Below are positions 730 through 56,238 of a stretch of 64,000 nt of DNA, piece after piece (position 1 is the first letter of the stretch; each line of letters begins with the position of its first letter). Origin of the DNA: Macrostomum lignano (taxonomy: Eukaryota); NCBI GenBank assembly GCA_002269645.1, contig NIVC01001698.1, positions 184,635 through 248,634 of the forward strand. The letters run 5' to 3'. Under the pieces are notes generated by a model. That model searched no databases, was not told the DNA's origin, and was given only the letters and a program-made list of their open reading frames with translations. Position numbers and translations under genes: made by a program.

Positions 730-3281
730 CCCAGTGAAAAATGATTCATGGATTCCACGTGGGTTCCACGTGGCCATGTGGAATTTAAATGTTTCTTTAA
801 TTTTTGCAAATAATTGACTTAAAGATGACATAATGGTATGCAAAGTATTTTTTATGCATTATTTTTTTATTTTTACTGTCCTAATGTTGATGTGGATTTT
901 ACAAGGAATTCATGAGAAATAAGCGTATATTGATTCAACATGGAATCCACTTCGATAAAAAACTGTGATACACCTTATTTAGACGTTTTTATGAAATTAC
1001 TAAAATTAATTATTATATTTATATGCTTTTAAGTAAAAATTATTATCTAAAAGCTAAATTATAATCGGAAAATAAGACACTGTTTGTTAAAATAGACAAA
1101 ATAGAAGTTAACAATAAAAAACGTTTCGTACGTTTTAAAATTAAATTAATTTTATTTTATATTCGTCAATGTCTTGGTCCAAGGCCTTGAAAGATAAAGT
1201 GCCTTGTTTATGGCTATTTAAGCACCTTAAAAATTTTAGTAGACCTAGCCTATAGGCAATAACTTACGAGTATAAGGCCATGGCCTCCATGGGATTAGAA
1301 ATTAGATAAATCAGTATTTTATCATAGATAGGCCTAATACTTTTGGTAAAATCCATGATAAATTTATTTAGGCCTAGGCCCTATCCAATTTCTAGGAATC
1401 CCATGGCCATGTCCATAGATTGGCTACTCATTTTTTAACTTAAATAGGCCTTTAGAAGTTCATAATTTCCTCTTAGTCCTACCTATCTATTTATATGTAT
1501 GCTTATTAGGCCTATTTTAAGCTAGGCCTATAACTATCAATTTAGGTCCTTCTATTTTAATTAAGGTTGGGAGTTGGGACTAGCTTGACTTTGTGAATTG
1601 TGACTAGTCAATCTAGTTAATCTGTTAAAAATCTATTAATTTATGATTTTCTTCAAAAAAGCCTATTAGCATCTTTTGGACTTGTTGCATTTTTAAAAAC
1701 AGTATTATTAATTATAATAAATAATTCTGCATTTACACTTGCAACTTGCTTTTGGCATAGCTAGCCTAGCAGATCCCTAAGGTTGCTATTATAAATAAAT
1801 AATGATTATTGTAAATTTGATCTGATTTAGGCCAAGTCCAGAATTTAATAGCCATAGGCATAGGGCATAGCTATTTAGGCTTAGGCCTAATGTTAAATCA
1901 TACTAGGCCAGCAAATATAAAAAAACATGCATTGCTTTGCCTAAATACTTTATAGTTTAAAATCAATTTTAAAATAAAAAATTAAATTTATAGAAACATA
2001 GGAATATTAATTATTTTTGTATTTATTATTTTATTGGTTTATTGATTGACTTAGGTAGGGTTTTCTTTTTTGCTAGAGACAAAGTGCAAAATTATATCCT
2101 ATGCTCACTTTCAGGGTTTTATGATTTTAAGGCTTAGAATGCAATTTCTCTTTTTTCTTATATAAAGGCAGTGCAAATAAGGCTTCAACAGAAAAATAGG
2201 TAATGAAATCGCACCTAAACTGTATCCACTTTTTAATTTCAATTTTCAAGGTGCAATTTTAAAATTTAAGGCGCATATGCACACTTTGCGCTTAAAAAAA
2301 TAAACCTAGAACTTAGGCCTAGTTAATTTTAAAATAAACTTTATTAAGTATTCATCCTTAAATTAGTTTTATGAATTATATCAATATAATCTATCAATCT
2401 TAATTGGCAACAATTATTTTTCTATTTCATTTCAGCCTAACATTACATGGCCCATCCTCAAACTTGGATGTCACCTTGGTCTTTCCTTTGAAGAAGCATG
2501 CAAAGCTACTTGGAATTTGAATATAATATCTAGAATGCTACCTTTTGTGAAGCAATGGTAAGTTTTAGTTATAAACTGATTTTTTTCTGTTATCAAAATC
2601 TGTTATAAGATCAAAATCTATCAAAATCTATTACAAAATCTATCATCAATCTGTTATAAAATTCTGTAATTTAACCCCTTTCTTTTCTAAGGTTTCTCAC
2701 CTGACCTGAAGAAGCAGCATTCTGGCAATTGGCAGCAGCATGTTTCTGACTGTTCTAATTCTGGTGCATTATATTATTGTTAATTAATTAATGCTATTGA
2801 CAATGTCAATTTCAAATTATATATTATATCATATGCGCAGCGCAACTTTAAAGATATCAATATCTATATCTGTGTGTTTATTCTTTGTGTGCCAGTGACT
2901 CACTACTGTATATAAATACACCTTACTTATTGAGACATCCTTTTTGAATATATTTTTGTGCAGAAATATTTTTTCGCTATAGCTAGTGTTTTTATCTGTG
3001 TTTCAGTTTCTTTTATATGGTATTGAGATCTGGGGTTCATATGAAGTTTTGAGATCTGATATTATTTTGAGATTTAGGATGCAACAATTTATTATGGCAA
3101 CCAGTATAATGGCTGTTTACTCAATGACAATGTGGATTCTATGTGAAATACATAATTACTTCCATGTGGATCTTCCATGTGGAATCCATATCTCAATTCC
3201 ACATGGATGGACGGAGACAAATGCACATATGGATTTCATATGAAAAATCCACATGGAATCCATATACTTTTTTTCACTGGG
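730..3281. mobile_element. Non-autonomous DNA transposon, CMC/EnSpm-like, about 2.55 kb
   Basis: TIR CCCAGTGAAAAA at 730-741 and its reverse complement TTTTTCACTGGG ending at 3281, with similarity continuing into ATGGATTCC. AT flanks both ends (728-729, 3282-3283), a possible 2-bp TSD. Subterminal GGATTCCAC/ATGTGGAT-type motifs cluster at both ends. No transposase ORF. The superfamily call is inferred from CCC termini plus 2-bp TSD. Confidence 0.65.
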
Positions 3282-29954: not shown

Positions 29955-30740
29955 TGGCTCATTCCATATAAGATGGACATATTTGGAAAATAGAAAAAAG
30001 TCAATATTTTTGCTTGCCATTGCCTAATTAGCCTATTTTTTTACCAAATGTTTATATTGTGCAATATATACAATCTAAGAATAAAGGAATGGTAAAATGT
30101 TGGATTAGTATGTTATCAATTGGCAAAGTCATTTTTGTAAAAATTTGGACATTTTTCGAAGCAAAAGACATCATTAAGATTTTGTACCTTTTAAAAACAA
30201 ATAGAAAGCTTTTGAAGGTTGAAACAAACTATAGATAAAAGTATAGTACTTGCATCATCAGATAAAAGCATTGGTGACCAAATAATCTATTATATTTCTA
30301 ATGTATTAGTACCTCAAAGTTACTGAATTGACAGAAAAAAATATGTTACGACCATAATGTTACGACCATAAGGCTGCCTTTTCTTTTGTATCTTTGTTGC
30401 CTTTTGAGTTTATATATTCTAATAAAAGAGTATGATTTCTAAAGATGTTCTTAGTCAAATTTTAAAAATGTATTGCAAAATATCAAAAATGAAAAATGTT
30501 ATAAGACTTTTACCTTTTAGTTTCTATATGTCAAAAATCCTGTTGTTACAACCATAAGTGTCATTTAAGGTTTAATAGCATCTATACTAATGATGATATC
30601 TATATGAAACTCTATAAATATATTCTAGACAAAATAATCTTTCATTTAAAATATTGGTTTAGTATATTCTATTATTAGATTTCATTTTATAAGTAAAAAT
30701 AACCTGTCATGTTACGACCATGCTTATATGGAATGAGCCA
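29955..30740. mobile_element. MITE, about 786 bp, unclassified
   Basis: Perfect 18-bp TIR TGGCTCATTCCATATAAG (29955-29972) / CTTATATGGAATGAGCCA (30723-30740). Internal GTTAC(G/A)ACCAT motifs at about 30347, 30359, 30546 and 30711. TC flanks both ends, but the TSD is uncertain. Confidence 0.7.
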
Positions 30741-30930
30741 TCTGCATCACTTTATCAGTAACACGACGGATGGCCTGCATAGCAGGCCATAGAGCCTTTC
30801 CACTCAAAACTGTTCTTTATGCCGTGCAGTCTGTGGGTAAATTGATGTCAACTCAAGCTCGCTATTCCAGACTGCTAATTCTGCTGAGCCGAACGATTGA
30901 CCATAGATATCTGTGTGGCACTGCAGTTAA

Positions 30931-33601
30931 GGACTGATGACCTGCATGGCAGGCCATCCGCTAATTCAGCAGAAGCAAAGACACGGTATTACGGTGTAGT
31001 TCAGATAATTTTATTTATGGAAGAGAACAAACCGTTATTAAAGTGAATATTTTTTACTTCTTACTCAGTCTGACAAATAGCAAAAAGAACCCGCGGTTTC
31101 AACAAGAAGAACTTTACAAATTTGTTAAAATACGAGTACGCCGAGGCTTCAACAGAAATGAGTAGAAACGAGTATAAACTTTCAGGAATTTACCACGTCA
31201 ATTACTGAGAAGAAAACTGTTGATTAATAAGTTCAATGGGCCTAAGTACAGGGATATAATTTATCATACCATCAAAATATAAAAGAGATTTATACACGAA
31301 AGCAATTGAATCCACATATAGAGTTAATTCAATTGTGCTATTTTCAATTTATTTATTATTTGCCAATGCATTTGTTCCACAATGGACATCTCCAGGTCTT
31401 CATTAATACTCGTAATTTAATAGTCAGAAAACGATTCAGCACAATTGAATTTATTTTATATGTTGATTCTCGCTTTCGTTTATCTACTTTTTTTTCAAGC
31501 GAGCTACTTTACCTAAAAGCGATTTAAACAACAGATTATGGCAGAAATTTCAACTCAATGTATCAAGTTTTTTTAATGTGAGTTAGAATTAACAAAGGCA
31601 GAATTAGTTCTCCGTGTGCCACTCACGAAAGCATTCACCAATGCACAGTCCGGGTGACCCTTGGCAGCTGGAGCAGACAAAGACTGTCTTTTTCTGAACA
31701 CCATTTTGCCAGCAGACTCTGCATCTTTTGGCAGGTCTTTCTTGAGCTGCTGTCGCTGGGAGACGCTGAGCGTAGTGGCCATTGTTCTGCTGTGCCGGTT
31801 CATTCACAGGAGCAGCCCGTTTTCTGCCAGTACCAGAGTTGATCATTAGCTGACGCACAGTTGTGCGCAGAAATGAGAGAAATTTAGCGGACCCACCAGC
31901 CTTCGAATACAAAATCTAGCAATTGTGTACCCCCTGAAGTAGCAGGTGAAAACCTAGGCGGTGAAACCAACGGTAAGTCTTACGACAGGCCAAGTACGGC
32001 TGCAGAGAACCATCCAGCCTGTCCACTCCGCCCATGTTCTTGGAGTAAACAACAGCCGTAATCGGCTTTGTCACCACCTCCTGCTGACCGCCACGTCGAA
32101 TTCGGGTGATCTCGGCGGTACCAGCAATGCTCTTGGTGTCGATGAAGTTAACCGTCTTAACTCCACTTTGCTTTCGATCAACAAGCTTCACAGCAAGCAG
32201 GCCCTCTTTTCGAGCAAATGCACATGAGTTGGCAGGAAGAGCCAGCTGCCGTAGACAGTCGGGGATCCCGCGATCTTGTCAAACTGTGCCCGTCAGAAAT
32301 GTGGATTTAGACAGCAGGAACTCGGCCAGTCGAGCCGAAGTAAACCAGCTGTCCGTGAACAGGTGGTAGCCAAGGTTTAAAATCTGGCTGCTCAACTCAA
32401 CCACAATGCGCTCGCTGATAGAAAGGTGGTCACACTCCAGCCCTTGTCCAAATTTCCTGTTTTCCGCATCTGTACTGTGGATTAAAAAGTTCCACATGTA
32501 CCCTGTCTGGGATTCACATAGACAGTACATTTTGATGCCAAACTTGTTTCGCTTGCTTGGTATGTACTGACGAAAAATCAGGCGTCCTTTGTACAGCACT
32601 AGCGATTCGTCAATGCAGATGTTTTGCTCTGGCAAATAAGTATTCTGCATTCCCAGCTGCACAATTCTAAGAAACGGTCGAATCTTTCTTAGAGGGTCGT
32701 TCAAGTCTGCAATTGCGGTGCAGTCGTAGAAGCGCAGGAAGTGCATGATCTGTTTATATCGATCTCTTGACAGGCTTGAAGGCTGCTGCATGAAAGGGCA
32801 CTGGTCGAATGGGTCCGTAGACCAGTAAAGGTGCAATTCCAGCTTCTTGCTCAGCCCCATGAAAAAGTTGGTCGCTATCACCTTCCTGATCTCGTTCAAT
32901 GTGCAATTCTTCCAAGTCTTCAAGATTGGTGGCAACTCAGCTGGCTCACCTCCTTCAGCTTGAAACCTTTCTAATTCAAACCAAGCTTTCTTGTTGGTCC
33001 ACTCGCACAGCTTGTTCATCAGCGCATCAGTTAAAAATAGGTCGAAAAACCATTGAATATTGTTGTCTGGATCAGCTGGCGCCACCAAATCTGGGTGCAG
33101 GCCAGAGGTCGCCATGAATTCCGAATCTGGCTCCTGCAAACCATTCTCTCCTGGTACGACGCGTTGCCAGCCACCTATTTCTTCATCCACGGATGCACTG
33201 TCTAGATCGGAGGCCTCATCGGACGAGTCAGTAGTGGAATCGCTGCTATCTTGATCCTCGTCATCAGACATCAGCTGCTCAAAATCTGGCTCTTCGTTGA
33301 GTGATGCCATGAAAACTGCTCGTATTCTGTATGCCAACTCTTACAAAATCCAAACTCTTATGCTAGGTTTTTTACAGTGACTTTCCTAACCACATTCATA
33401 AGATGTCATAAGACTCCAGGTCTTTAGCGGACAGTCAAACCAACTGTCTATGACATAACTTTAAAGTTATTCAACCTGTCAACGCAGTGACAACTTCCAG
33501 TACAATTTTTCAGTCAGGAGCTGTGACACTGAGTACAAACACGCCCATAGACAATATCGTAGTTGCCTGCAGCCATGGCCTGCATAGCAGGCCATCCGTC
33601 T
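30931..33601 (-). mobile_element. piggyBac DNA transposon, about 2.67 kb, TTAA-flanked
   Basis: TTAA at 30927-30930 and 33602-33605. Imperfect TIRs GGACTGATGACCTGCATGGCAGGCCAT vs AGACGGATGGCCTGCTATGCAGGCCAT (about 21/27 match) enclose the transposase. Confidence 0.85.
31604..33310 (-). pseudogene. piggyBac transposase (568 codons) with two in-frame stops and no frameshift
   Basis: ORFs 33337-32279, 32191-31916 and 31912-31604 share one frame. Catalytic Ds in IDESLV, FTDSWF, MGGVDRLD; C-terminal Cys-rich CRVC..CSSC..C..C..WH. Stops: TGA at 32281-32279, TAG at 31918-31916. Confidence 0.9.
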
Positions 33602-33812
33602 TTAAGTGAGGAGATCAGAAGGTTTACAAAACTTAGAAAATTTTCTATGGCCTGCTATGCAGGCCACCCGTTCGCAATTGAGATGATATGTTTTCAATTC
33701 GTCAGGAAGAGGTTATGAATTAGACTAAGTAGAAATCAGTCTTCTTGAGTTAGTAGAAAATAACATGGCTGTTAGACAACTCTTATAATTCTACAACTCA
33801 GGTGATGTTCTC

Positions 33813-34454
33813 TAGTGTTCCGCCATAGCCGTAGCTACAGCTACGGGATCCTACAGCAAATACAGTAAAATAGGTGCCTATGGCAGCTACGGATATGCCT
33901 ATGGTAGGTAGCTGCTCTTACAGCTACAACTACAGAAATATGGTACTTGTTGTCACATTCTGTAGATTCCTGTAGCCATAGTTATTCATGTTAAAACATT
34001 GAAAAAATATTAGAAACAGGTAGAGTAAAACAAAGATACTTTTAGTAAACTGTATTATCAACTTAGAAACTTTTAAAATATACCTTAAAAAGTACAATAA
34101 AGCACTAGCAAACTCTAATTTTTTTATGTGAAAAAGTTTAGCATTAGTACTTTCAGTAACAATTAAGTATTGTTGCTTTAAAAAAAGACAAAATATAATC
34201 TTACAAAGGCAATTGAGTGTTTCTTTTATTTTCTAACTTAATTTGCAGTTGTTTAAGCACCAGGTTATCTTCTTGATTAAAAATATTTTGTTTTCTAGAC
34301 TTTTTGTTAAAACTACGGCAATGGCTATGGGAACTACGGGAATATGGTAATATTAGGGTCCCTACAGCTACAGAATACGGAGAATTGGAATAAGCCGTAG
34401 TTTTGCTTACAGCTACGGCTACGGTACATAGACCCTCCTTATGGTGGAACACTA
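33813..34454. mobile_element. hAT-superfamily MITE, 642 bp
   Basis: TIR TAGTGTTCC(G/A)CCATA; exact 8-bp TSD ATGTTCTC at 33805-33812 and 34455-34462; subterminal TACAGCTACGG/CCGTAGCT repeats. Confidence 0.9.
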
Positions 34455-34634
34455 ATGTTCTCATGACTCAAAAGTTGCCTTTCAATCATATTATAGTTGT
34501 TTAAGTCATTAAAAAGCTACAAGTCACCCTAGCATTGCTAGAGCCATTAGTGAGTTGTTTGCAATGACTATTGATTCTTGTCATGGTAATGTTTTCAATG
34601 GTCTTGAAGCCTATCTGAGACTTTTTAAATAACT

Positions 34635-34925
34635 GTCGACTTATAACTTAAAGGTTAGGGGTTCAATTCATGCCCCAATTGGAACAATTTGTGTCCTTAA
34701 GCAAGAAACTTGACTCTGAATTGTTTTAGCTCACCTAGCTATAAAATGGATGCCAGCATTAGCTGGGTAATTGAGGGTATATGTGGTGACCCCCTAGTCC
34801 TTAGACTAAATAGCCAAAGGTAGCCTTTAGATACATTGCGCAATAGCTGCTGCTAAGCTTTTGGTTGAACATCTGCCTAATTAGGGCCTAGGGCAAGTGT
34901 ATTAAATGATTATTAATATTATTGA
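34635..34925 (+). mobile_element. CORE-SINE copy, heavily C->T / G->A mutated
   Basis: Aligns end to end with the reverse complements of 40918-41215 and 43195-43496. Confidence 0.85.
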
Positions 34926-36328
34926 CTACAATAGCAAAAAATAAAAGCTATAAAGGAATTTATATTAGTCTGGAGCCATCAAAGAGTGAATAGGCAAATG
35001 AGTGTTTAGAGATACCAAAATGAAAGATGCCATTATAAATAGATAAATCTAGGATAAGTAGACCTTGAACTAAAAGATTACCAAGTAAGACAAAAAATAA
35101 AGAAAATTTAATCATAGTAGCTAAAATAATTTAGGAAAGAGAAGCCAATATTGGGCAATGAAGGACAATCACTATTATATGAGACTTGGATAGATTATAA
35201 ATACTTGTATATGGCAATATCAAAAATTTAAGTCTAAGAGTATGCTTCAATAACTAAATTGTTACCAAACTAATAATTGACACAAAATATGCCAAAAAGC
35301 CCTAGTAGCCTAGCTTTGCTGCTTAGGTTTAGAGAGTAGAAAGTTATGGCTAGAGTTGGATTAGAGCTACCACTTGTTTATGACTAGTTTTGGATTAAAA
35401 GCTTTAATATAATTGCTTAAGTATACTTATTGCCAATATATAGGGTATAGATAATTATATATCATTTTAAATTATATTTTAAAATAATGAATAAGACAAT
35501 GTTTGATAATTAATATAATAGATACTATGCATATACATAAGCTTTTTATCATTTTTATGAGGTAATAATGAGGCCATATTAATGTAAGACAATCTTATAA
35601 ATTATATTTAGTTTTAGGCTTATATCTAAAAATCTATTTTTTTTCAATGAAATATTTTAAAGTAAGGATTATTTTATTAAATATTTTTAACATTTATAAG
35701 AGCTTCATAGGCCTAAGTGCCTTTTTAATTTTGATTATAACCATCTAATATAGAGCCCTGTCTGATAAAGCCTATGAAAATAATATATTTATTAATATTG
35801 ATTATTTCCGATTTTAAAAATAACAACAGGCCTACAAAAGTACTATAGTCTAGAGATAGGCCTATAAAGAAAAAAAACTAAAAAATTATATCAATGCATA
35901 CATTAAAAAGGCATAAAAATTGGTTAGAGTTAGAGAGACCTATAAGCATTATATTGAAAATATTTGTATACAGGTACAAAACTAACTTTTTGGTTTAAAA
36001 TGATCAATAGTGCCCTAAGCCATAAGTCTTTAACTTATGCCTACAAAGGCTAAATGGACAAAAATGTACTACAAAAGTCTTACAATTTTAGAATACAAAA
36101 AGTTTTATAACATTTCATTACATGACAAATTGTCAAAAGTAAGGCATCCTCTTTTTTTAAATACCTGCACCCGGGCCTGCAGCAATGACCACGCGACTGG
36201 GCGGGCCGAGGTGGTGACGCCCGCAGACGGGAAACTTTACAAGAAGCCAGCAGTAAAACAAAAAATTGACTCAGAATTTGAAATATTGAAAATTACTAAC
36301 TACAAAGAATAATTTAAGTGGCGCACCC

Positions 36329-36672
36329 ACAAAGGGCCTGTCAACTTAAGCTCATAAAGTGGAGCCCGAGTAACCTATATACACAAATGATACGTCATTC
36401 TGCTCACCGTGACACCAAGAAGCAGGGTTTGGCAAAAAAGCGACGAATATTGGACTTGTAAATAATTAAGGGACTATTATACGTCAACTTAAGCTCATAA
36501 ATCAGAGTCCCTGTAATTATCCCCTTGCTTGTTCTCCCCTATCCCAAGTCCAATTTTAGTCACTGCCAAACCCTGCTTCCTGGTGTTCACTGTACGTGAG
36601 CAGAATGACGGATCATTTGTGTACATGGGTTACTCGGGCTCCATGAGCTTAAGTTGACATGCAGGCCTTTTG
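36329..36672. mobile_element. Fold-back/MITE-like element with ~100-bp inverted arms
   Basis: 36333-36433 is the reverse complement of 36563-36667 (TCAACTTAAGCTCAT..GGAGCCCGAGTAACC..ACACAAATGAT..GAAGCAGGGTTTGGCA). Confidence 0.7.
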
Positions 36673-37019
36673 TTGAAGGGGGCGGATTCTGGAGGGTAAA
36701 GCTTTAATTTTTTTGCCTTTGACTTTTTTTCAGGTCCCGCCTGATAATTTCAATAATTCAAGTCTTCAACACCAGAAAATTTTTTTAAGAATTTTTTTAA
36801 AAACTGCATTTAGATTAGTTTTTACCTTAAGTTAGTTTCTTACGGAAATGATGTTTAAAAAGCAAAAAATCAGCAGCCCTGAAAGTAAGCTCTAGTCTAA
36901 AATATCAGCATCCCCTGTGTTTGGCATCGAATTCCTCTACTTACAGTGAGCCATGGCTTAACTCTAACTCTTCCTTTAGCTTGGCCTATCAACAAAAACT
37001 TCTAACAGACCCTTGGTTG

Positions 37020-37870
37020 CATCTCAGCAGCATTGAATCCTCCTTCATGAGCCACAGCATTTCAGCAATCCCCCATGCATGAGCTTTGACGTAGCTCAGC
37101 AATCTCCCCGTAAGCCTCAGCAATTCCCCCATTAGTCTTTTTATGATCTGAACCCTAACCCTAAAACTCTAACCCTGTTAAGAGTCACAGCAACAGCAAT
37201 TCCGCATGAGTCTTGACATCTTAGCAACCCCCCATGAGCCACAGAATTTTAGCTACAGTATTCTCCCGGCCATTTAATAATAAATCATATAATATAAGAT
37301 CTATGGTCTCGACATCTCAGCAATTTCCCTCTCATGAGATCTAACATCCTATAAATTACCTCAATGAGTCTTTTATGGACAGGGCGATTCTTTTATTGCT
37401 GAACCCAGCTTTAACCCAGACGAAAGCCACATGCAGCATTTTAGCAATTCCCTACCACAGATCTTGACATTTCAACGATTCCCTCCATGAGCCTTGACAT
37501 CCTAGCAATTCCTCAAACGAGTCTTATGGTTGAAATGACAATATCAACCATGCTACATTGTCATGCTTTGGCAAGTAAATATACGAGCCGTAAGACGTGG
37601 ACAAAATTATACAGTTTAGGCAATTACGTCTAGCTCATAGACTTGTATTAGTGATATAGATTCCTAAATTTAGAATTCTATTGCATTTTTAGTATACTTG
37701 ACTAGCAATTGCCCCCCCCCGGGAGGACACAAAACTGCACCCCCTAAGCTTGCCATCTCAGTAATTCCCCCAGAAGCCTCGACATTTCAGCCATTTACCC
37801 AGTAAGCCTTCAGATCTCGTCAATTCACCCAGTAAGCCTTGCCATCTCAGCAATTCCCCCACGAGTCTTA
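37020..37870. repeat. Degenerate dispersed copies of the AGCCTTGACATCTCAGCAATTCCCC repeat
   Basis: Several diverged units; same family as 48466-49718. Confidence 0.7.
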
Positions 37871-38502
37871 AAGGCTAACTTCTTTGACCAAAAACAATAC
37901 TTTAAGCTATTCCAGAACTGATCAATTCCAGAAAAAGTACATTTAATTAGTATTGCCATTGGCAGCTCAAGCAATAACTAAAAATTAACTTTTTGTTCAA
38001 ATAAACGTTTTAACTTATAAAAAATCTACGCTATTTCAACCCCATTTGCCTCGCGTAGGCACAGGAAATGTTTTTAAATACGAGTCGTAATCAAAATTGA
38101 CACCTCTGCAAGTCTCAGCAGCTTTGGGGAATAGAGGAATTATTTATAGCATCAGCTCGAGAATTGAAGTTTAGTCTATGGCCATATAAACATATTGAGC
38201 TCTCACTGAGAGAAAAATACTCAAAATTATAGATCTTCTAATGTAAAAATTTGAAATTAGAAAATTAGTTGTGCAGTTTTTAAGGAGATGTGAATCTTCC
38301 ACTCAAAGAAAGTCAGAAAGAAAGTCAGAAAGTGAAAGTGAATTGAAAAAAGACCTTAGACAAATAAAAAATCCATTTTAAGCTGCCCAAAGTTTTTGCA
38401 TGTGTGTTTCATCTAGCTGCTGCGCAAAAATAAGTAGCATATGGCAGACATGGCTAGCAATAAAAAGTACGAGCTATTTTTACTCGTAATTGCCTGTCAC
38501 AG

Positions 38503-38705
<203 letters not shown>

Positions 38706-38928
38706 AGAAAATCGCCTGCTCTGCCATGGCCCAGAAACCGAGTGCGAACTCGCTACACCTGAATACGTCAAGCGTCACAGAGTCACCTGGCGCCCTTATC
38801 TAATCCTTCAATTTAGTAATGCCAGCCAACATGCAGTAGAAGAATGAAATTGCGGAGAACTTTCTGCTGCACGCAAATTTCTGTTCGGAGTCGGGCAAAC
38901 TGGCCTTAACTAAATTGACTCAATTAAA

Positions 38929-40542
38929 ATGAATTTTATTATCAGAGGTGTTCTGGGCCTTGTGCTTTTCTTCGTTTTGTTTAATGTGGCCCGGAATCTG
39001 TTCTACGACCTGTACGCCAGCAACTGGCACAGGGCCAGCCGAGAGAACACGGCTGGCAAGCGGGTGCTCATCACCGGCTCGAGTCGAGGCATCGGAGAGG
39101 CCCTGGCGCATGTCTACGCGGAGCTTGGCGCTCACGTGACTGTCCACGCGAGGCGGTTGGACTCGCTTGAGAAGGTGTGCGAAAACCTGCATGCATCCAG
39201 AGAGCCAAGAGGTCTCTGCAGCAGCATGATGAATACAGAATAGGGAAGCCAGTGCTTCGATAGGAAGATGACGTTCATGCTAGCCTACTCAAAAAAATTC
39301 TCTTGCTCGCAGATTCGAGCCGAGTGCCGCCGACTCGGCGCTGCCAGTGTGCACGCAGTCGCCGGCGATATGTCCTCGCCGGGCAGGGCCGCTCAGGTGG
39401 TGGCTGACGCGGCAGCTGCGATGGGTGGCGGCCTGGACATCGTGGTGGTGAACCACATCAGCCCGTCAGAGCTGACAACGTTGTCGCGGGCGATGCCCGA
39501 CTCTGCTCAGAAGCAGCTGGCCGCCATGCAGACGAACTACTTCAGCTACGTGGAGGCCGCCCGGGCCGCCCTGCCGCACCTGGAGAAGTCGGCCGGCAGC
39601 CTCGTGCTGATCTCCTCGGCCGCCGCCCGCCTGCCCATCCCCTACTGCTACGAGTACTGCGCCTCCAAGCGCGCTCTGGAGGGCTTCTTCTCGACGCTGC
39701 GCCAGGAGCTGGCGCTGAACGGGTCCGCCGTGCACGCCGGCCTGGCTGTCCTGGGCCTGATTGGCACAGATAGCGCCAGGCAGACTGTGCCGTGAGCAGA
39801 GTTTTACGTTACTCGTAGAAATTAAGTTAGCGTTATGTTAGACAGCATATGCATGATTGCTATCGGGGACTGACTGAGTAAAGACGGGATGAGCACGAAA
39901 GCAAAATTTCACCGATGCCGAAAAATCCTTCAAAGCCCGTCACAAGACTGACAACTTTTGTCACGTCTTTGAAAGGCTTGTGAAGTAAACTCCCAATGAC
40001 ATTGTCCTGCGAAACAATATGCTTTGACGTAGCCCTTCAGTTTAGGCAGGTGTAGGCAGGTGACTGTACGAGAAGGTGACTTAGTAGGCAGGTGACTAAG
40101 AAGGCAATAAGGCAGGTTACTTAGAAGGCAGTAAGGCAGGTGACTTAGAAGGCAGTAGGCAGGGGACTAAGAAGGCAATAGGCAGGTTACTTAGAAGGCA
40201 GTGAGGCAGGTGACTTAGAAGGCAGTAAGGCAGGTGACTTAGAAGGCATAAGACGAGTGCGAGGTTCCTGGCTAAGAGAAGCTTCTACATGTATAAAAAG
40301 ATGAAAACAGCGCTCCGGTTTCCCCCAATATTCCACATGACCTGGACTGCAGCAAGTACAGCAAGGGCTCCAACTTAGACTTTGCGTCTCCGGCGGCCAC
40401 GGCGCTGGACGTCACCGCCATCCCAGTCGGCCGGCTGCGCGAGCTGGCGAGTCCCTGGAAGATGCGAGTGCCTCTGCTGCTGGGCGGCTGGGCGCCGGAG
40501 CACATTGAGCGGCACCTGCAGGCTCTCACTAGGATCCTCTGA
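38929..40542 (+). CDS. Short-chain dehydrogenase/reductase, 11-beta-HSD1-like, 304 aa, 3 exons
   Basis: Exons 38929-39174, 39313-39791, 40353-40542 (915 nt). N-terminal membrane anchor, TGSSRGIG, VVVNHI, catalytic YCASK, VLGLIGTDSA. Confidence 0.88.
40040..40250. repeat. ~24-bp tandem repeat AGGCAGGTGACTTAGAAGGCAGTA, SDR intron 2
   Basis: About 8 degenerate copies. Confidence 0.9.
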
Positions 40543-40917: not shown

Positions 40918-41215
40918 AATTAATAATAATACTAACTGATTACACCTGCCCCAATTGGGCCAGATGTGCAACCGACAGCTCAGCCGCAGCCATTGCTGCG
41001 GGCTGCGAATCTGATGGCTGCGAACGGCTGTTCAGTCCGAGGACTGGGGGGTCGCCACACACACCCTCAATTACCCAATGCTGGCACCCATTTTACAGCT
41101 GGGTGAACTGTGAAACAATGCAGAGTTAAGTGTCTTGCTCAAGGACACAAATTGTTCCAGTGGTATCGGGAATCGAACCTCCGACCTTCAAGTCATGAGT
41201 CCGACGCTCTAACCT
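40918..41215 (-). mobile_element. tRNA-derived CORE-SINE
   Basis: Minus strand: B box GGTTCGATTCC, CORE-like GTGTCCTTGAGCAAGACACTTAACTCTGC..CTGTAAAATGGG, (ATT)n tail. Confidence 0.85.
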
Positions 41216-43194: not shown

Positions 43195-43496
43195 AATAAT
43201 AATAATAATAATAAAATTGATTACACCTGCCCTATTGGGCAGATGTGCAACCGGACAGCTCAGCCGCAGTTATTGCGCGGCAAATCTGAAGGCTGCGAAC
43301 GGCTGTTCAGTCCGAGGACTGGGGTTGCTACACACACCCTTAATTATCCCAGCTAATGCTGGGACCCTGAAGCTGGGTGAACTGAAGCAATGCAGAGTTA
43401 AGTGTCTTGCTCAAGGACACAAATTGTTACAGTGGGATCCCGAGTCGAACCCCCGACCTTCAAGTCGTGAGTCCGACGCTCTGACCACTGGGCCAC
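43195..43496 (-). mobile_element. tRNA-derived CORE-SINE, near full length
   Basis: A box TGGCCCAGTGG, B box GGTTCGACTC, CORE-like segment, (ATT)n tail; homologous to 40918-41215. Confidence 0.88.
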
Positions 43497-50900: not shown

Positions 50901-53900
50901 CCTGGAATTGGTCTGGTCGCAGGCCGGTCTTGGCGTAGACGGCCTGAGCAGCCCGGATAGTCATGTCGTAGCCGACCATCTTGATGGCCGACTTGTCGTT
51001 GAACACCGAGGGCAGGTCGGTGGCCATCTCGACGGCCAGTAGCTCCACGGCCTGGGCCTAATGGGCCAGTCAGGATGGCGAGGATAATGAGCTCAGTGCT
51101 CATAGAATAAAGCAGGATCGATCTGAAATCCCATGTACCCAATCTGAAATCCCAGGTACCCAATCTGAAATCCCAGGTACCCAATCTGAATCCCAGGTAC
51201 CCGTTCTGAAATCCCAATTGATCCCAGTGATAGATAGTTATCCATTCAGTCAGGGAAAGCAGTCTGACTGCAATTCAGAGCCATCCCACTCTCCAGGTGA
51301 CCATTGGCATGATTCAACGCCAGCAAAGGCGGCTCACCTGCAGTCCGTAGCGCAGCACGAACTCCTCGTTGGCCAGCACGGCGGCGGCGGCGCCGTCGGA
51401 GGTCGGGCAGCACTGCAGCTTGGTCAGGGGCGCGTAGATCGGCTGCGAGCTGAGGATCTCCTGTACCGAATAGACGTCAGTGAACTGCGAGTTCGGATTG
51501 TTGGCGGAGTGCCGGTGGTTCTTGGCTGCGATTTTGGCGAAGTGCTCCGGCGTGGTGCCGTACATCTTCATGTGCTCGCGGCCGGCCGCGCCAAACATCT
51601 GCGCCGCAATTGGCGCCGCCTCCAGGCCGTGCCGCTCGGCAAGGACCTGTGGGGGAGTTCGAAGTACTTTGCTTAATAAAAACTAGGGTAACTTTTAATG
51701 AACAGGTTAATTAAGAAAGGTTAGTGAGCAAGAAGGGAGAACGGGAAGAGCAGAGACAGAGTTCACAGAGGACAGGGGGGAGAGGACAGGGAGAGCAGAG
51801 GCTGAGGACACTGAGGACAAGGGAGAGGACAGGGAGAGCAGAGGCTGAGGACACAGAGGACAGGGGGGAGAGGACAGGGAGAGCAGAGGCTGAGGACACT
51901 GAGGACAAGGGAGAGGACAGGGAGAGCAGAGACTGAGTTCACAGAGGACAAGGGAGAGGACAGGGAGAGCAGAGGCTGAGGACACTGAGGACAGGGGGGA
52001 GAGGACAGGGAGAGCAGAGGCTGAGGACACTGAAAACAAGGGAGAGGACAGGGAGAGCAGAGGCTGAGGACACTGAGGACAGGGGGGAGAGGACAGGGAG
52101 AGCAGAGGCTGAGGACACTGAGGACAAGGGAGAGGACAGGGAGAGCAGAGACTGAGTTCACAGAGGACAAGGGAGAGGACAGGGAGAGCAGAGGCTGAGG
52201 ACACTGAGGACAGGGGGGAGAGGACAGGGAGAGCAGAGGCTGAGGACACTGAGGACAAGGGAGAGGACAGGGAGAGCAGAGGCTGAGGACACTGAGGACA
52301 AGGGAGAGGACAGGGAGAGCAGAGGCTGAGGACACTGAGGAGTCATGAGGACAAGGGAGAGGACAGGGAGAGCAGAGGCTGAGGACACTGAGGACAAGGG
52401 AGAGGACAGGGAGAGCAGAGGCTGAGAACACTGAGGACAGGGGGGAGAGGACAGGGAGAGCAGAGGCTGAGGAAACTGAGGACAAGGGAGAGGACAGGGA
52501 GAGCAGAGGCTGAGAACACTGAGGACAGGGGGGAGAGGACAGGGAGAGCAGAGGCTGAGGACACTGAGGACAAGGGAGAGGACAGGGAGAGCAGAGGCTG
52601 AGGACACTGAGGACAAGGGAGAGGACAGGGAGAGCAGAGGCTGAGGACACTGAGGAGTCATGAGGACAAGGGAGAGGACAGGGAGAGCAGAGGCTGAGGA
52701 AACTGAGGACAAGGGAGAGGACAGGGAGAGCAGAGGCTGAGGACACTGAGGACAGGGGGGAGAGGACAGGGAGAGCAGAGGCTGAGGACACTGAGGACAA
52801 GGGAGAGGACAGGGAGAGCAGAGGCTGAGGACACTGAGGACAGGGGGGAGAGGACAGGGAGAGCAGAGGCTGAGGACACTGAGGACAGGGGGGAGAGGAC
52901 AGGGAGAGCAGAGGCTGAGGACACTGAGGACAAGGGAGAGGACAGGGAGAGCAGAGGCTGAGGACACGGAGTAAGAATGGAGAGGACAGAGGCGAGTCCC
53001 AAGCAGGTCAAATCGCAAGCCCCAACCTCAACGTGACGCTCGAGGGGCGAGGCCCGGTCGCTGAAGGTCTGGCCAAGGGAGCCGCGCTGCATCTTCTCGA
53101 ATCCGAGCGCCAGCACGCAGGCGGCCCGGCCGCCGCGGACCAACTCGGCAGCCAAGTACAGAGCAGTGGAGCCGGTCGAACAGTTATTGTTGACATTGAC
53201 AACCGGGATGCCAGTCAGGCCGATCTGGTACAGGGCCCGCTGGCCGCAGGTGCTGTCGCCATAGACATAGCCGCAGACGGCCTGCTGCACAGAAGCATAG
53301 CCCAGCCTGGCATCAGTGAGCGCCTTGTCCACTGCCTCCTTGGCCATGTCTGGGTAGTCAAAGTTCTCCCGGCGCCCTGGCTTCTCAAACTGTGACAGGA
53401 AGTGGTTGGTTGGATACATTAAATACTCTTCATTGTTTAGGTTAAATTTGCTTGTTAAGGTTATGCCTTTTCGATCCCATCTGTTTAGGATTTAATAGGC
53501 ATAACATTTTAACGTCCAGAAATGGACACTTATTAAAAGTTATAACCACTCAAAAAGATGTTTTTGGTGGAAAAATGTTATGCACATGATACTAGATACT
53601 CATATGATATATGCATTTTTTGTTGTAGTTTTTGTTTGCAAAAAAGCCAATTGCTAAATTACTTCTATGGAAAAAAATTATACTATTTAATTATATTTAA
53701 TGAAGTTTCAGTTCAATAAAGTTTGTCTTCATTTTTCAGATTAATTTTAAAAACAAAAATTCATATACTTTAATAGTTATACACAATGAAATATAAAGCA
53801 AAGTTTTTCATCATGAAAGTAAAAATGAATGATTAAGATAATATGTATTTGAATATTAAAGTAAAATGCACTATTTGTGTGCTGAGAATTATTGTGGGTT

Positions 53901-56238
53901 GTTTGAAAGGTGTTTATAATGTTAGGCATATAATAATAGTTTATGATAGGCCTAATTTTGTTGAAAATATTTTTTTTGTGTTTTAAATGCTATAAAAATA
54001 AAAAAATGACTTTTCATAGCTCTTTTTTTGATAAATATAGTTGTTATTGTCTTCTTTGATATGAGCAATCTATTTAAATAAAATTTAGTGCAAAAAGCAC
54101 TTTATAAGAAAAATAAAATAAAAAAGGTTACAAAATATATCAGTTTTATTGCCAGTAGTTTGTCTTTTTATCTCTTTTATATCAAAAATGGGACTGCACA
54201 TTAGTTTTGCAGAATGACAAATTCTATTTAATTCACTATACATTTGGCTAGGGAATATATCATAGCATATGAATGCAAGACTGCTTTAAATTCTTTTTGA
54301 CATTCTCTAATTTTTAATGACTAATCTTATGTATTTTAACCACAGGTCAGTTGGGAAAGTCTGCACAAACTTTGTATATAGATATATATAAATAGATATA
54401 TACATATATATAGACTTTGAAACAATTCATATTGAAAAAGAAATGTTACAAATAAACAAAAAACAAAATCAAAGACACCAGAGTAAAAATGAAAAGTTAC
54501 AAAAAAGTTTATTGCCAATATACAATGGTAAAAAAATATATATAGGCCTATAAAATTTCTAAGTTTCTAAAAAAGTTATATATTATCTCTAGATTGTATT
54601 TTGTTAAAACACTGCTTAAAAGTTAAAAAGAAAAAAACCACAAAAAAGCATTTTAAAAGTCCAAGTTAACCAATTTGCAATTTTTTGTTTCACTTTTTTT
54701 AAATAATAAACAATTAATTTTAAAACTTGTAGGCCTTAAAGAAGGCTAATTTTTTTGCTACTTACAAAACAAAAAGTAATCTGTGTTTTACTTTTTATTT
54801 TATTTAAAAATATGAAGTATTTCTAAGGATTTCAAAGTTTTTCTAAAACCACATAAACTTGCAAAAATTCATACTAATTTAAAGTGCAAAGTTTGCTAGT
54901 GAACATCTTTCTCTAAAAATAAATATACCACTAATTCCTTGTTGCAAAATAATCTTTAAGTTGTTTTCTTTCATTTAAATATCAACTTGCATAGTATTAG
55001 TATTTGTAATATGCCTATATTTAGACTTAAAAAATTTTGCCAATTTTTAGGTAAAAAATGGTACCACAAAATGTGAACCTAGCATCCAAATCAAATGCTT
55101 CCTGTATGCTTTGTAAGCAACGAAGAACAATGAAATTGCACTAAAACATGTATCATTGTGGCGTGTATGCAGGAAAAAAAGAATTTTCCAAATCGCTTTA
55201 GTAGAAGCTAAGTAAAATACAATTTTCCAATCCTTATGGGAATTCCAATGTGTTACCAGGCTTCCAAATCAGATGCTTACTGTATGTTTATTAAGCAACA
55301 AAGAACAATATAATTACACTAAAACATGTATCATCACGGTGTGTATGCAGGAAAAAAGAATTTTCTAAATTGCTTTGGTAGAAGCTGAGTAAAATGCAAT
55401 TTTCCGATCCTTATGGGAATTTGAATGCTTAAATAATATACTTACGTTGAATACAATTTATTGCAAATGAACTCTACAAAATACATGTCAAGACTAACGA
55501 AAGTGATAAACAAGTAAACCCTTAAAAATAATGTTAAATATGTTGTAGAATTATAGAGTGTAACATTATAAGATACTTAAAGTTGAAAAAATATATTATT
55601 ATAGCTTTTCTATTATTTTTATAAGAGTCATTTTAGGTCGTAATTAAACTTACTGTTTTAACAAATCAATTTAATAAAAATAAAGCTATACGTAAATAAT
55701 TTGTACTTTTATAGACTTTTTTACTTTTTTAAAACTTATAAATTAAAACATTTAAATTAAAATTTATTAAAATTAAAATTAACATTAAAACATTTATGTT
55801 TTAAAATAACTTAAAACATAAATTTATTTTATAGCTTTATCACTTCAAATTGCCAAAAAACGAATTTTTATGAAACTTGCCCCTGATTTTTGGATTTCGC
55901 CATATAGGCCTAATATAAAGCCAAGGTCCAACATGAAAGAGAATTAAAATAAAAATCCTGTGTTTACTGTTCATTTATTTTTTCCACAGGTGCACATATA
56001 TTAAATTAATTATTATGCTGCAGTTAAAATAATTTTATGGGTTTCTATTTGGCTTTTAGGTCTTGGAAAGGCTAAAATTTTCTTCAGACATAAGCTCATC
56101 ATGATCCACACTATGGGTGACATATGACCTCGAAAGAAAAAGAAAAGAAATGTTTACAAAACGGTTTTTCAGCCTAGCCCTAGGGCTTACCTTGGTCATT
56201 CCAACACCAATCACATACACGCGCGGTGATGCATTCAT
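47923..56238 (-). CDS. SCP2: Sterol carrier protein X (peroxisomal thiolase + SCP2 domain), 539 aa, 6 exons
   Basis: Exons 56238-56191, 53389-53027, 51646-51338, 51057-50829, 50458-49967, 48101-47923 (1620 nt, phases consistent). Motifs [68 protein letters not shown]; C-terminal PTS1 AKL. Confidence 0.96.
48466..49718. repeat. 28/29-bp minisatellite AAGCCTTGACATCTCAGCAATTCCCC(GA/CAT), SCP2 intron 5
   Basis: About 44 copies; the CCGA variant dominates the left half and the CCCAT variant the right. Confidence 0.97.
50520..50765. repeat. 22-bp repeat GGGAGATTCTCATGTGGCATAT, SCP2 intron 4
   Basis: About 11 degenerate copies. Confidence 0.9.
51120..51215. repeat. 21-bp repeat TCTGAAATCCCAGGTACCCAA, SCP2 intron 3
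   Basis: 4-5 copies. Confidence 0.9.
51745..52970. repeat. 43-45-bp purine-rich minisatellite, SCP2 intron 2
   Basis: GAGAGGACAGGGAGAGCAGAGGCTGAGGACACTGAGGACA(AGG/GGGGG) units. Confidence 0.96.
55085..55421. repeat. 178-bp tandem duplication (2 diverged copies), SCP2 intron 1
   Basis: TCCAAATC..CCTTATGGGAATT starts at 55085 and again at 55263. Confidence 0.9.

What the first reader, a model, noticed from the sequence alone, without database searches (positions are those of the whole stretch)
34635..36170. RIP-like CpA/TpG->TpA and CpG hypermutation of a SINE copy in an animal genome
Seen: hand alignment of the SINE at 34635-34925 against its two siblings (40918-41215, 43195-43496) shows about 15 sites where both siblings have CA or TG and this copy has TA (e.g. 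CCCAGTCCTCGGACTGAACAG -> CCTAGTCCTTAGACTAAATAG; GGTGTGTG -> GGTATATG; CTTGAGC -> CTTAAGC). About 6 CpG sites changed to TG, CA or TA, and only a handful of other substitutions occur in the alignable part. The adjacent 34861-36170 has a single CpG (35809) while GGCC/AGGCCT/CTAG remain common. Established: CpA->TpA on both strands of repeats is the signature of repeat-induced point mutation in ascomycete fungi; ordinary animal CpG decay gives TG/CA, and reaching TA needs a second CpA hit. Inference: a locally targeted CpA+CpG methylation/deamination genome-defence process acts on repeats in this animal. I am not aware of this being described for flatworms but cannot check the literature.
Basis: partly seen in the sequence, partly recalled or inferred. 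Interest (0 to 1): 0.85.

Follow-up and report, generated by a model that had tools for sequence, protein, structure and literature searches.

The report
Methylated-tract decay of a flatworm SINE
One old SINE copy in the flatworm Macrostomum lignano has lost its CpG and many CpA sites because it lies in a 2.3 kb tract that behaves as germline-methylated DNA; this is regional decay that also affects single-copy DNA, not a fungal-style repeat-induced point mutation defence.

Summary
Copy A (34,635-34,925) carries 36 C>T/G>A changes against a 55-copy consensus: CpG 12/28, CpA 17/47, CpT 5/36, CpC 2/41 (CpA vs CpC+CpT p=3.5e-4). It also carries 17 transversions, so it is old, not freshly hypermutated. 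The RIP reading fails. 52 of 55 sampled copies, including two within 8.5 kb, are unaffected. The single-copy flanks (33,900-36,170) are equally CpG-free. 33 of 36 changes predate the whole-genome duplication and fit steady accumulation. The second RIP index is not met. The genome is M. lignano Mlig_3_7 and encodes DNMT1 and DNMT3. Between homeologs, CpG turnover is 65% of CpG positions inside the tract against 3-4% outside, with independent decay of the same CpG to CA and TG. That marks a regionally methylated tract. The CpA>TpA excess is genuine in this copy, and converted-query searches show it recurs genome-wide, strongly for CpG+CpA and modestly for CpA alone. Its cause is unsettled: non-CpG methylation in methylated tracts, or a roughly twofold genome-wide CpA/TpA transition bias acting on old DNA. 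Interest is moderate: a first sequence footprint of mosaic methylation in a free-living flatworm.

The parts
34635..34925 (+). Copy A: old tRNA-derived SINE copy with CpG and CpA sites converted to TpG/CpA/TpA (sense strand is window +)
   Evidence: Alignments; 20.7% diverged from the consensus; CpG 12/28, CpA 17/47, CpT 5/36, CpC 2/41, 17 transversions; 1 of 14 CpGs intact; tRNA head of the family confirmed
33900..36170 (.). AT-rich, CpG-poor tract (about 2.3 kb, GC about 0.25-0.35) that contains copy A; inferred germline-methylated domain
   Evidence: CpG positions and 100-bp profile; 34,930-36,165 is single-copy apart from homeologs; 15/23 CpG positions differ between homeologs vs 2/67 and 13/313 outside; YpG 6.4% vs 1.6% outside, p=2.5e-4
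34316..34422 (.). Residual CpG cluster (CTACGG-like short motifs) in which different CpGs have decayed in each homeolog
   Evidence: Alignment. Across the whole tract 33,900-36,170: CG/TG 9, CG/CA 6, CA/TG 3 (independent decay of one ancestral CpG in both lineages), CG/TA 1
40918..41215 (-). Sibling SINE copy B, not hypermutated
   Evidence: 5.1% from the consensus; C>T at CpG 1, CpA 0, CpC 1, CpT 1; 13 CpGs
43195..43496 (-). Sibling SINE copy C, not hypermutated; also present in the C387 homeolog
   Evidence: 6.6% from the consensus (scored on its near-identical twin L002); ortholog L003 at 94%; 13 CpGs
29957..33712 (-). piggyBac-like element absent from the C387 homeolog (insertion/deletion polymorphism at the left edge of the tract)
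   Evidence: The homeolog joins 29,956 directly to 33,713; DDE_Tnp_1_7 E=1.2e-49 on ORF 32,279-33,340(-), continued in 31,916-32,278(-)
1269..2835 (.). Another AT-rich, nearly CpG-free tract of the same compositional type
   Evidence: Two CpG-free stretches (1,269-2,209 and 2,291-2,835); GC 0.28-0.30, GpC o/e 1.65-2.13
53515..55120 (.). Another AT-rich, CpG-free tract (1.6 kb, GC 0.235)
   Evidence: No CpG over 1,608 bp; GpC o/e 1.89
38914..39795 (+). Nearest recognisable host gene (short-chain dehydrogenase exons), CpG-normal
   Evidence: adh_short E=3.7e-22 and 5.7e-9; CpG o/e 0.95 in 39,001-40,000

Best explanation
Copy A is an old insertion of a tRNA-derived SINE of Macrostomum lignano. 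It lies inside a discrete ~2.3 kb tract (33,900-36,170) that has long been cytosine-methylated in the germ line. 5-methylcytosine deaminates to thymine, so CpG sites in the tract, in the repeat and in single-copy DNA alike, have been converted to TpG/CpA at a rate more than ten times that of neighbouring DNA, and this still continues. The TpG/CpA products and original CpA/TpG sites are then converted more slowly to TpA, which drives the tract towards AT-richness. It leaves only cytosines followed by C or T (GGCC, AGGCCT).

Shown: the regional, CpG-dominated, strand-symmetric, steady and repeat-independent nature of the decay, and the presence of DNMT1 and DNMT3. Inferred: that the tract is actually methylated. 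Also inferred: that the CpA>TpA step comes from lower-level non-CpG (CpA) methylation by the DNMT3-type enzyme in the same tract, at roughly one-eighth of the CpG rate. It is not triggered by sequence homology and is not RIP.
For: Regional CpG hypermutability over one time span (since the WGD): 15/23 CpG positions differ by a transition inside the tract, against 2/67 in the right flank and 13/313 in the GC-richer segment (p=4e-14). On pyrimidine-site denominators, YpG is 6.4% vs 1.6% (p=2.5e-4). Transversions are equal inside and outside (OR 1.15). Three sites read CA in one homeolog and TG in the other, so one ancestral CpG decayed independently twice.

CpG products are the canonical ones: copy A CA4/TG3/TA2 with 1 of 14 intact; L067 CA7/TG4 with 3 intact and no transversions. 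Changes are strand-symmetric, 18:18. The 3' context explains the pattern (p=1e-4) and the 5' context does not add to it (p=0.12).

Against a control copy of equal transversion age lying in CpG-normal flanks (L049): CpA 17 vs 4 (p=0.0024), CpG 12 vs 3 (p=0.014), CpC+CpT 7 vs 5 (p=0.77).

Genome-wide: the CpG+CpA-converted consensus gives 40 hits of 176-251 bits, while the CpC+CpT-converted control reaches 178 bits at most. For CpA alone on a CpG-free 116-nt stretch, 14 hits reach >=110 bits against 1 for the control.

AT-rich DNA is bimodal for CpG (o/e 0.08 vs 1.01). Mass balance: in AT-rich depleted bins the CpG deficit (-18 per kb) reappears as a TpA surplus (+23 per kb) and not as TpG/CpA (+0.6). 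In mid-GC depleted bins it reappears as TpG/CpA (+21). A forward simulation using copy A's own rates best reproduces the dinucleotide profile of depleted tracts (RMSD 0.117; 0.234 without the CpA preference; 0.36 context-free).

DNMT1 (RFD plus catalytic domain) and DNMT3 (ADD plus catalytic domain) loci are each present three times. Published statements agree: DNMT1 and DNMT3 retained, low 5mC (PMC11292947, PMC9246332, PMC10658182).
Against: No methylation data were available for this locus, so methylation of the tract is inferred from sequence alone. The literature reports only low global 5mC in adults.

The CpA component is not clearly tied to the tract. After the WGD, the ~2-fold YpA transition excess occurs both in the tract (OR 2.1, p=0.034) and in the adjacent, less depleted right flank (OR 3.3, p=0.037). 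Polarised homeolog triples show no CpA excess in depleted bins (CpA 4/150, CpT 4/171, CpC 1/69). L067 has CpG-only decay (CpA 4/47 vs CpC+CpT 4/77). If a general 2-fold CpA bias is assumed, copy A's excess is only p=0.086.

Across 52 ordinary copies, flank CpG depletion does not predict CpG loss in the copy (rho -0.15, n.s.). The polarised evidence rests on one locus and its homeolog. The 'control' copy L049/L053 could owe its transversions to subfamily differences and not to age. Composition alone cannot separate 3'- from 5'-context models.
Confidence: 0.6

Rival explanations
1. The regional CpG methylation decay is as in the best explanation, but the CpA>TpA excess has nothing to do with methylation. 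It reflects a genome-wide, roughly 1.5-2-fold higher transition rate at CpA/TpA steps acting for a long time on an old copy and an old tract.
For: The post-WGD YpA excess is seen in the tract and in the flank alike. CpG-normal triples also show YpA 1.36% vs 0.83-1.0%. Polarised triples in depleted bins are flat. L067 shows CpG loss without CpA loss. With an assumed 2-fold bias, copy A is only marginally unusual (p=0.086). A general bias in old copies could also produce the modest CpA-only asymmetry.
Against: The 52 ordinary copies show CpA 0.030 vs CpC 0.028 and CpT 0.021, only about 1.2-fold; under that bias copy A has p=0.004. Control copy L049 of equal transversion age has 4 CpA changes against 17 (p=0.0024). 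The cleanest CpG-normal homeolog segment is flat (YpA 1.0%, YpT 0.7%, YpC 1.1%). The TpA surplus separates CpG-depleted from CpG-normal AT-rich bins.
Confidence: 0.25
2. A RIP-like, homology-triggered genome defence mutates repeated DNA at CpA and CpG.
For: C>T/G>A transitions dominate, with a CpA>TpA component. TpA/ApT rises to 1.19 against 0.61-0.83 in siblings. About 40 other copies carry the same type of damage. DNMT-domain genes exist.
Against: Thousands of near-identical copies persist, and 52 of 55 sampled copies are unaffected, including two within 8.5 kb. Single-copy flanks are equally affected. The damage is CpG-dominated. (CpA+TpG)/(ApC+GpT) is 1.44, not <=1.03. Accumulation is steady, not a burst. 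The element is about 300 bp, below the ~400 bp Neurospora threshold. A Neurospora-like CpA-only model fits the tract composition worst (RMSD 0.58).
Confidence: 0.03
3. There is no regional process. Copy A and its tract are simply very old DNA that drifted to the genome's AT-rich, CpG-poor mutational equilibrium, while GC-rich neighbours are young transposon and satellite insertions.
For: Copy A is old (17 transversions, about 11 times the post-WGD transversion divergence per lineage). A young piggyBac-like element is inserted at the tract edge in one homeolog only. Accumulation is steady. In the pooled homeolog groups, AT-depleted bins evolve about twice as fast overall (transversions 1.33% vs 0.59%).
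Against: Over the same post-WGD interval, CpG turnover differs about 15-20-fold between the tract and neighbouring DNA while transversions do not. L067 lost 11 of 14 CpGs with zero transversions. L049/L053 is as old by transversions but keeps 11 of 14 CpGs. AT-rich DNA falls into two CpG classes (o/e 0.08 and 1.01).
Confidence: 0.07
4. An AID/APOBEC-type cytosine deaminase edited the SINE, either its cDNA during retrotransposition or the locus DNA.
For: TCA 7/10 and TCG 5/8 are the hottest trinucleotides and GCA is the coldest (2/14). TpC is depleted in the tracts. A 5'-TpC model fits composition about as well as the pure 3' model.
Against: Perfect strand symmetry (18:18) excludes single-strand cDNA editing. 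The 5' context is not significant once the 3' context is in the model. The unique flanks are affected. ApA/TpT does not rise as TpC>TpT predicts. No APOBEC_N match in the genome; the NAD1 search was uninformative.
Confidence: 0.03

Closest known systems
Methylation-driven CpG decay in mosaically methylated invertebrate genomes (5mC deamination, CpG o/e bimodality)
   Same: Near-total CpG loss with TpG/CpA products, strand symmetry, regional extent covering repeat and unique DNA alike, bimodal CpG o/e, DNMT1 plus DNMT3 present.
   Different: The depleted tracts seen here are AT-rich non-coding DNA, while the recognisable exons nearby are CpG-normal. That is not the classic gene-body pattern. 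In the most depleted tracts the TpG/CpA products have themselves gone on to TpA. No methylome is available to confirm it.
Repeat-induced point mutation (RIP) of ascomycete fungi
   Same: C:G>T:A transitions, a CpA>TpA component, raised TpA/ApT, and the end-product of AT-rich blocks next to GC-rich DNA.
   Different: Not homology-dependent, not confined to repeats, CpG-dominated, steady and not punctuated, second RIP index not met, element shorter than the Neurospora length threshold, and most copies untouched.
Non-CpG (CpA) methylation by DNMT3-type enzymes (vertebrate neurons, oocytes, ES cells); non-CpG methylation reported in the cestode Taenia solium (as cited in PMC10658182)
   Same: The per-site order CpG > CpA > CpT > CpC in copy A (43%, 36%, 14%, 5%) is, from my own knowledge, the order of DNMT3 non-CpG preference. 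CAG is the most-hit CpA context (9/17).
   Different: No direct evidence of mCA here. The evolutionary footprint of mCA deamination is not an established signature in animals. The CpA effect is not clearly tract-specific after the WGD.
APOBEC3 hypermutation of retroelements in vertebrates
   Same: Heavily C>T/G>A-mutated individual copies of a retroelement among many intact ones.
   Different: APOBEC editing is strand-asymmetric and defined by the 5' neighbour. Here it is symmetric, defined by the 3' neighbour, and extends into the flanks.

Membership tests
RIP (repeat-induced point mutation) | C:G to T:A transitions dominate the changes | tested here: met
   36 of 56 substitutions against the consensus are C>T/G>A
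RIP (repeat-induced point mutation) | Strong CpA>TpA dominance over other CpN (Neurospora type) | tested here: not met
   CpA 17 against 19 other CpN: dominance 0.89; CpG per-site rate >= CpA and 13/14 CpGs lost
RIP (repeat-induced point mutation) | Homology dependence: duplicated copies (>~400 bp, >~80% identity) are all hit | tested here: not met
   Element about 300 bp; more than 2,000 candidate copies; 52 of 55 sampled copies unaffected, including two within 8.5 kb (criteria from PMC2621366)
RIP (repeat-induced point mutation) | Mutation confined to the duplicated segment | tested here: not met
   Single-copy flanks 33,900-34,634 and 34,926-36,170 are equally CpG-free and show the same homeolog differences
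RIP (repeat-induced point mutation) | Both RIP indices: TpA/ApT >=0.89 and (CpA+TpG)/(ApC+GpT) <=1.03 | tested here: not met
   Copy A 1.19 and 1.44; AT block 1.11 and 1.25
RIP (repeat-induced point mutation) | Punctuated action (one or a few sexual cycles after duplication) | tested here: inconclusive
   C>T:transversion 33:15 before and 6:4 after the homeolog split (p=0.71) fits steady accumulation, but the numbers are small
RIP (repeat-induced point mutation) | RID/Masc1-type methyltransferase-like gene | not testable with these tools
   Three PF00145 locus types were found; two are DNMT1 and DNMT3 by accessory domains. The sequences could not be fetched for phylogeny
Methylated-domain CpG decay (5mC deamination) | CpG depletion with TpG/CpA as products | tested here: met
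   CpG fates CA/TG in copy A and L067; homeolog CG/TG 9, CG/CA 6, CA/TG 3; mass balance in mid-GC depleted bins
Methylated-domain CpG decay (5mC deamination) | Regionally elevated CpG transition rate independent of repeat status | tested here: met
   15/23 vs 2/67 and 13/313 (p=4e-14); YpG 6.4% vs 1.6% (p=2.5e-4); transversions equal
Methylated-domain CpG decay (5mC deamination) | Maintenance and de novo DNA methyltransferases encoded | tested here: met
   PF00145 with PF12047 on C3325/C112/C866 (DNMT1); PF00145 with PF17980 on C305/C2545/C3236 (DNMT3); agrees with PMC11292947 and PMC9246332
Methylated-domain CpG decay (5mC deamination) | 5mC actually present on the tract in germline cells | not testable with these tools
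   No methylome data accessible; Wasik et al. 2015 is not held
Non-CpG (CpA) methylation footprint | Per-site C>T order CpG > CpA > CpT > CpC | tested here: met
   43% > 36% > 14% > 5% in copy A; 3' context p=1e-4
Non-CpG (CpA) methylation footprint | CpA>TpA excess co-localises with CpG-depleted (methylated) DNA | tested here: inconclusive
   For: copy A vs L049 (p=0.0024); TpA surplus only in depleted AT-rich bins. Against: the YpA excess is also in the less depleted flank; triples flat; L067 is CpG-only
AID/APOBEC editing | Specificity set by the 5' neighbour; strand-coordinated clusters | tested here: not met
   5' context p=0.12 after the 3' context; 18 C>T: 18 G>A
AID/APOBEC editing | Deaminase gene in the genome | tested here: inconclusive
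   No APOBEC_N hit. No NAD1 hit, but nothing rang in its controls. Divergent clades were not searched.

The most novel reading that the evidence does not exclude
Macrostomum lignano targets dense cytosine methylation, in CpG and at lower level in CpA context, to discrete non-coding tracts that include transposon insertions. Deamination then erodes them in two steps (CpG > TpG/CpA > TpA) into AT-rich, GGCC-retaining blocks. This would be an animal, homology-independent analogue of the AT-isochores that RIP creates in fungi, and the first evolutionary footprint of non-CpG methylation in an invertebrate.
Probability: 0.25. Interest if true: 0.6.

Novelty: new member of a known kind. Interest (0 to 1): 0.3.

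Why it matters
[quoted passage not shown] The sequence itself argues that germline methylation there is mosaic. It is strong enough to erase CpG completely from some kilobase-scale non-coding tracts (o/e 0.08) while leaving other AT-rich DNA untouched (o/e 1.01). It can swallow transposon insertions. That gives concrete loci and a testable prediction for methylome work in a regeneration model. It also raises the narrower question of whether CpA methylation leaves a mutational footprint in an invertebrate. It removes the more dramatic claim of RIP in an animal.

Tried and rejected
All later genome searches gave coordinates and scores only.

(2) All-against-all BLAST of the held 356 kb for other repeat families with AT-rich and GC-rich copies found none besides this SINE.

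(3) A profile (nhmmer) search for further degenerate SINE copies found none.

(4) My first homeolog test divided transition differences by C-bearing sites. I rejected it for the CpA question because T>C at abundant TpA sites inflates it. It was redone with pyrimidine-site denominators, which weakened the CpA claim and kept the CpG claim.

(5) Correlation between flank CpG o/e and CpG loss across the 52 ordinary copies was not significant.

(6) Composition-only forward simulation could not separate 3'- from 5'-context models without a combined model.

(7) Rfam at gathering threshold and ARAGORN on the window found nothing. The tRNA head was only detected in a near-consensus copy.

(8) Wasik et al. 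2015, the only M. lignano bisulfite data I know of, is not in the library.

(9) The subfamily explanation was rejected: no copy is closer than 82% to copy A except its own homeologs.

(10) An early impression that the damage was a 'burst that stopped' was rejected after comparing C>T:transversion ratios before and after the split.
Full report
SOURCE. The window is G000:C1698:184,635-248,634 of a 764,410,778-bp, 5,269-contig assembly. This matches Macrostomum lignano Mlig_3_7, which has 5,270 scaffolds and 764,424,962 bp (PMC5730564). The difference of one scaffold and 14,184 bp fits removal of the mitochondrial scaffold. PMC10733133 also counts 5,269 scaffolds and describes three subgenomes at 1.9-2.4% SNP divergence.

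CHECK OF THE OBSERVATION. Copy A (34,635-34,925) aligns with siblings B and C only when reverse-complemented. Where B and C agree, A has 50 private changes, against 8 for B and 12 for C. 29 of A's are C>T/G>A: 14 at CpA/TpG, 10 at CpG and 5 elsewhere.

I built a consensus from 55 distinct genomic copies. Its 277-bp body has 47 CpA-type, 41 CpC-type, 36 CpT-type and 28 CpG-type cytosine positions. Copy A has C>T at 17, 2, 5 and 12 of these, plus 3 A/T>G/C transitions, 17 transversions and 6 gap columns. CpA against CpC+CpT gives p=3.5e-4 and CpG against CpC+CpT gives p=2e-4. The changes are strand-symmetric, 18:18. In a logistic model the 3' neighbour explains the pattern (p=1e-4) and the 5' neighbour adds nothing significant (p=0.12).

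The CpG-free stretch next to the copy and the excess of GGCC, AGGCCT and GCC are real. The family is a genuine tRNA-derived SINE (Rfam tRNA 34.3 bits).
- The other substitutions are not 'a handful': there are 17 transversions, so the copy is old.
- CpG damage is larger than stated: 13 of 14 CpGs are gone.

NOT A SUBFAMILY, NOT UNIQUE. Searching the genome with copy A finds only its 100% twin (C1305), a 92% homeolog (C387) and ordinary copies at 82% or less. The TA states are therefore not inherited from a master copy.

I then made two artificial queries from the consensus. One had all 75 CpG+CpA positions converted and the other had all 77 CpC+CpT positions converted.

| Query | Hits | Identity | Bits |
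|---|---|---|---|
| CpG+CpA converted | 40; copy A ranks fifth | 75-82% | 176-251 |
| CpC+CpT converted control | best hit | 75% | 178 |
| CpC+CpT converted control | the other 39 | 71-75% | 132-159 |

The control's lower hits sit near the 72% expected for unmutated copies. 35 hits of the first query exceed the control's best. The decay type is recurrent and context-specific.

A CpA-only version used a CpG-free 116-nt stretch with 25 conversions in each query. It is asymmetric too, but modestly: 14 hits reach >=110 bits against 1 for the control.

WHY IT IS NOT RIP.
- 52 of the 55 sampled copies have nearly flat per-site rates (CpA 0.030, CpC 0.028, CpT 0.021, CpG 0.040). This includes B and C, which lie within 8.5 kb of A. 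These were top-scoring hits, so the sample is biased towards intact copies, but thousands of such copies exist.
- The 1.24-kb AT-rich block beside A is single-copy except for its homeologs and is just as CpG-free.
- RIP's second index fails: (CpA+TpG)/(ApC+GpT) is 1.44, against a threshold of <=1.03. CpG decay keeps refilling CpA/TpG.
- 33 of the 36 C>T changes are shared with the C387 homeolog. The C>T:transversion ratio is 33:15 for shared changes and 6:4 for private ones (p=0.71). This fits a steady process over the copy's life and needs no burst.
- A Neurospora-like CpA-only model reproduces the tract composition worst (RMSD 0.58).

WHAT IT IS. The CpG-poor tract spans about 33,900-36,170, with a small residual CpG cluster at 34,316-34,422. 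The comparison with the post-WGD homeolog gives every region the same elapsed time.

| Region | CpG positions differing by a transition |
|---|---|
| Tract 33,900-36,170 | 15/23 |
| Right flank 36,171-37,686 | 2/67 |
| GC-richer segment 42,354-44,986 | 13/313 |

The contrast gives p=4e-14, while transversion divergence is the same inside and outside (OR 1.15). On pyrimidine-site denominators, YpG is 6.4% in the tract against 1.6% outside (p=2.5e-4). Three sites read CA in one homeolog and TG in the other, so one ancestral CpG decayed independently in both lineages. That is the signature of methylated CpG.

A second hypermutated copy, L067 (C2790), lost 11 of 14 CpGs to CA or TG with no transversion at all. 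It sits at the edge of another AT-rich, CpG-free tract. A copy of similar transversion age in CpG-normal flanks (L049/L053) keeps 11 of 14 CpGs.

Across the held 356 kb, AT-rich 400-bp bins fall into two classes: CpG o/e 0.08 (44 bins) and 1.01 (62 bins).

The genome encodes DNMT1 (RFD domain 6-7 kb from the catalytic domain on C3325, C112 and C866). It also encodes DNMT3 (ADD domain beside the catalytic domain on C305, C2545 and C3236) and a third PF00145 locus type, presumably DNMT2. Reviews say the same and report low 5mC. No APOBEC_N domain was found.

THE CpA COMPONENT. It is genuine in copy A. Evidence that it is linked to methylated tracts:
- Against control copy L049, CpA is 17 vs 4 (p=0.0024) while CpC+CpT is 7 vs 5 (p=0.77).
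- In mid-GC CpG-depleted bins the CpG deficit (about -27 per kb) reappears as TpG/CpA (+21 per kb). In AT-rich depleted bins the deficit (-18 per kb) reappears as TpA (+23 per kb) with no extra TpG/CpA (+0.6).
- A forward simulation used copy A's own rates (3': G 8, A 1, T 0.35, C 0.1; 5': T 1.6, A 1.2, C 0.75, G 0.65). It reproduces the dinucleotide profile of the depleted tracts best (RMSD 0.117). Dropping the CpA preference gives 0.234.

Evidence against the link:
- My first homeolog test overstated CpA, because T>C at abundant TpA sites entered the numerator. With proper denominators, the roughly 2-fold YpA excess is present in the tract (p=0.034) and also in the only partly depleted right flank (p=0.037). 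It is absent from the CpG-normal segment.
- Polarised triples from five other homeolog groups show no CpA excess in depleted bins (4/150, 4/171, 1/69), although majority-rule polarisation is imperfect.
- L067 shows no CpA excess.
- Under an assumed general 2-fold CpA bias, copy A's excess is p=0.086; under 1.2-fold it is p=0.004.

My best reading is that the CpA step is lower-level non-CpG methylation in the same tracts. From L067 and copy A I estimate it at roughly one-eighth of the CpG rate, which is inference. The per-site order CpG>CpA>CpT>CpC matches DNMT3 non-CpG preference as I know it. A tract-independent CpA/TpA transition bias remains a serious rival.

SURROUNDINGS.
- A piggyBac-type element (29,957-33,712; DDE_Tnp_1_7 E=1.2e-49) is absent from the C387 homeolog.
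- A short-chain dehydrogenase gene (38,914-39,795) is CpG-normal.
- Similar AT-rich, CpG-free tracts lie at 1,269-2,835 and 53,515-55,120. With the tract around copy A they cover about 8.5% of the window.

VERDICT. The interpretation as RIP-like repeat defence is not supported. The best explanation is decay of a regionally methylated tract that happens to contain an old SINE copy. The novelty is modest: a first sequence footprint of mosaic germline methylation in a free-living flatworm, plus an open and testable question about CpA.

LIMITS. The polarised evidence comes from one locus and its homeolog. No methylation data were available. The ~40 similarly damaged loci could not be fetched.

Noticed in passing
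window 61,758-63,607 (+): Adjacent ORFs match Endonuclease_7 (E=1.4e-7) and a type-B 'organellar and viral' DNA polymerase (weak: E=1.9e-4, 20.9 bits, below Pfam's cut-off of 25.8). This is possibly part of a Polinton/Maverick-like or other virus-like element.
   Followed up: no
window 29,957-33,712: A 3.76-kb piggyBac-like segment is present in C1698 and its twin C1305 but absent from the C387 homeolog, so transposon gain or loss occurred after the whole-genome duplication.
   Followed up: partly
window 34,635-34,925 (copy A) and L063: Five of copy A's 17 transversions are G>T at TpG (TG>TT); the homeolog has four and the control copy L049 has one. They occur at the same dinucleotide that is hit by transitions, and they are unexplained.
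   Followed up: no
G000:C1305:16,574-19,753 vs the window: C1305 carries a 99.9-100% identical copy of this locus, far closer than the 1.9% L1-L2 subgenome divergence reported in the literature. It is probably assembly redundancy or a haplotig.
   Followed up: no
held loci, polarised homeolog triples (CpG-normal class): Apparent T>C at TpA is about three times higher (21/850) than at TpG, TpT or TpC in CpG-normal DNA. It may be mis-polarised CpA>TpA on the shared L-subgenome stem, or a real TpA>CpA bias.
   Followed up: no
window 5,000-9,000; 22,000-23,000; 27,000-29,000; 51,744-52,966; 38,454-38,850: Large GC-rich, strongly skewed low-complexity or tandem arrays: for example 52,001-53,000 has GC skew 0.55, AT skew 0.74 and CT/AG o/e 3.7, and a (GA)n-type microsatellite lies at about 38.5 kb. 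They account for much of the window's GC bimodality.
   Followed up: no
pooled homeolog groups (L005-L075): In pooled homeolog groups, AT-rich CpG-depleted bins show about twice the transversion divergence of CpG-normal bins (1.33% vs 0.59%). Inside the window's own tract, transversions are not elevated (OR 1.15).
   Followed up: partly
window 12,631-13,374 (+): An exon-like ORF matches the OATP organic anion transporter family (E=9.6e-25).
   Followed up: no
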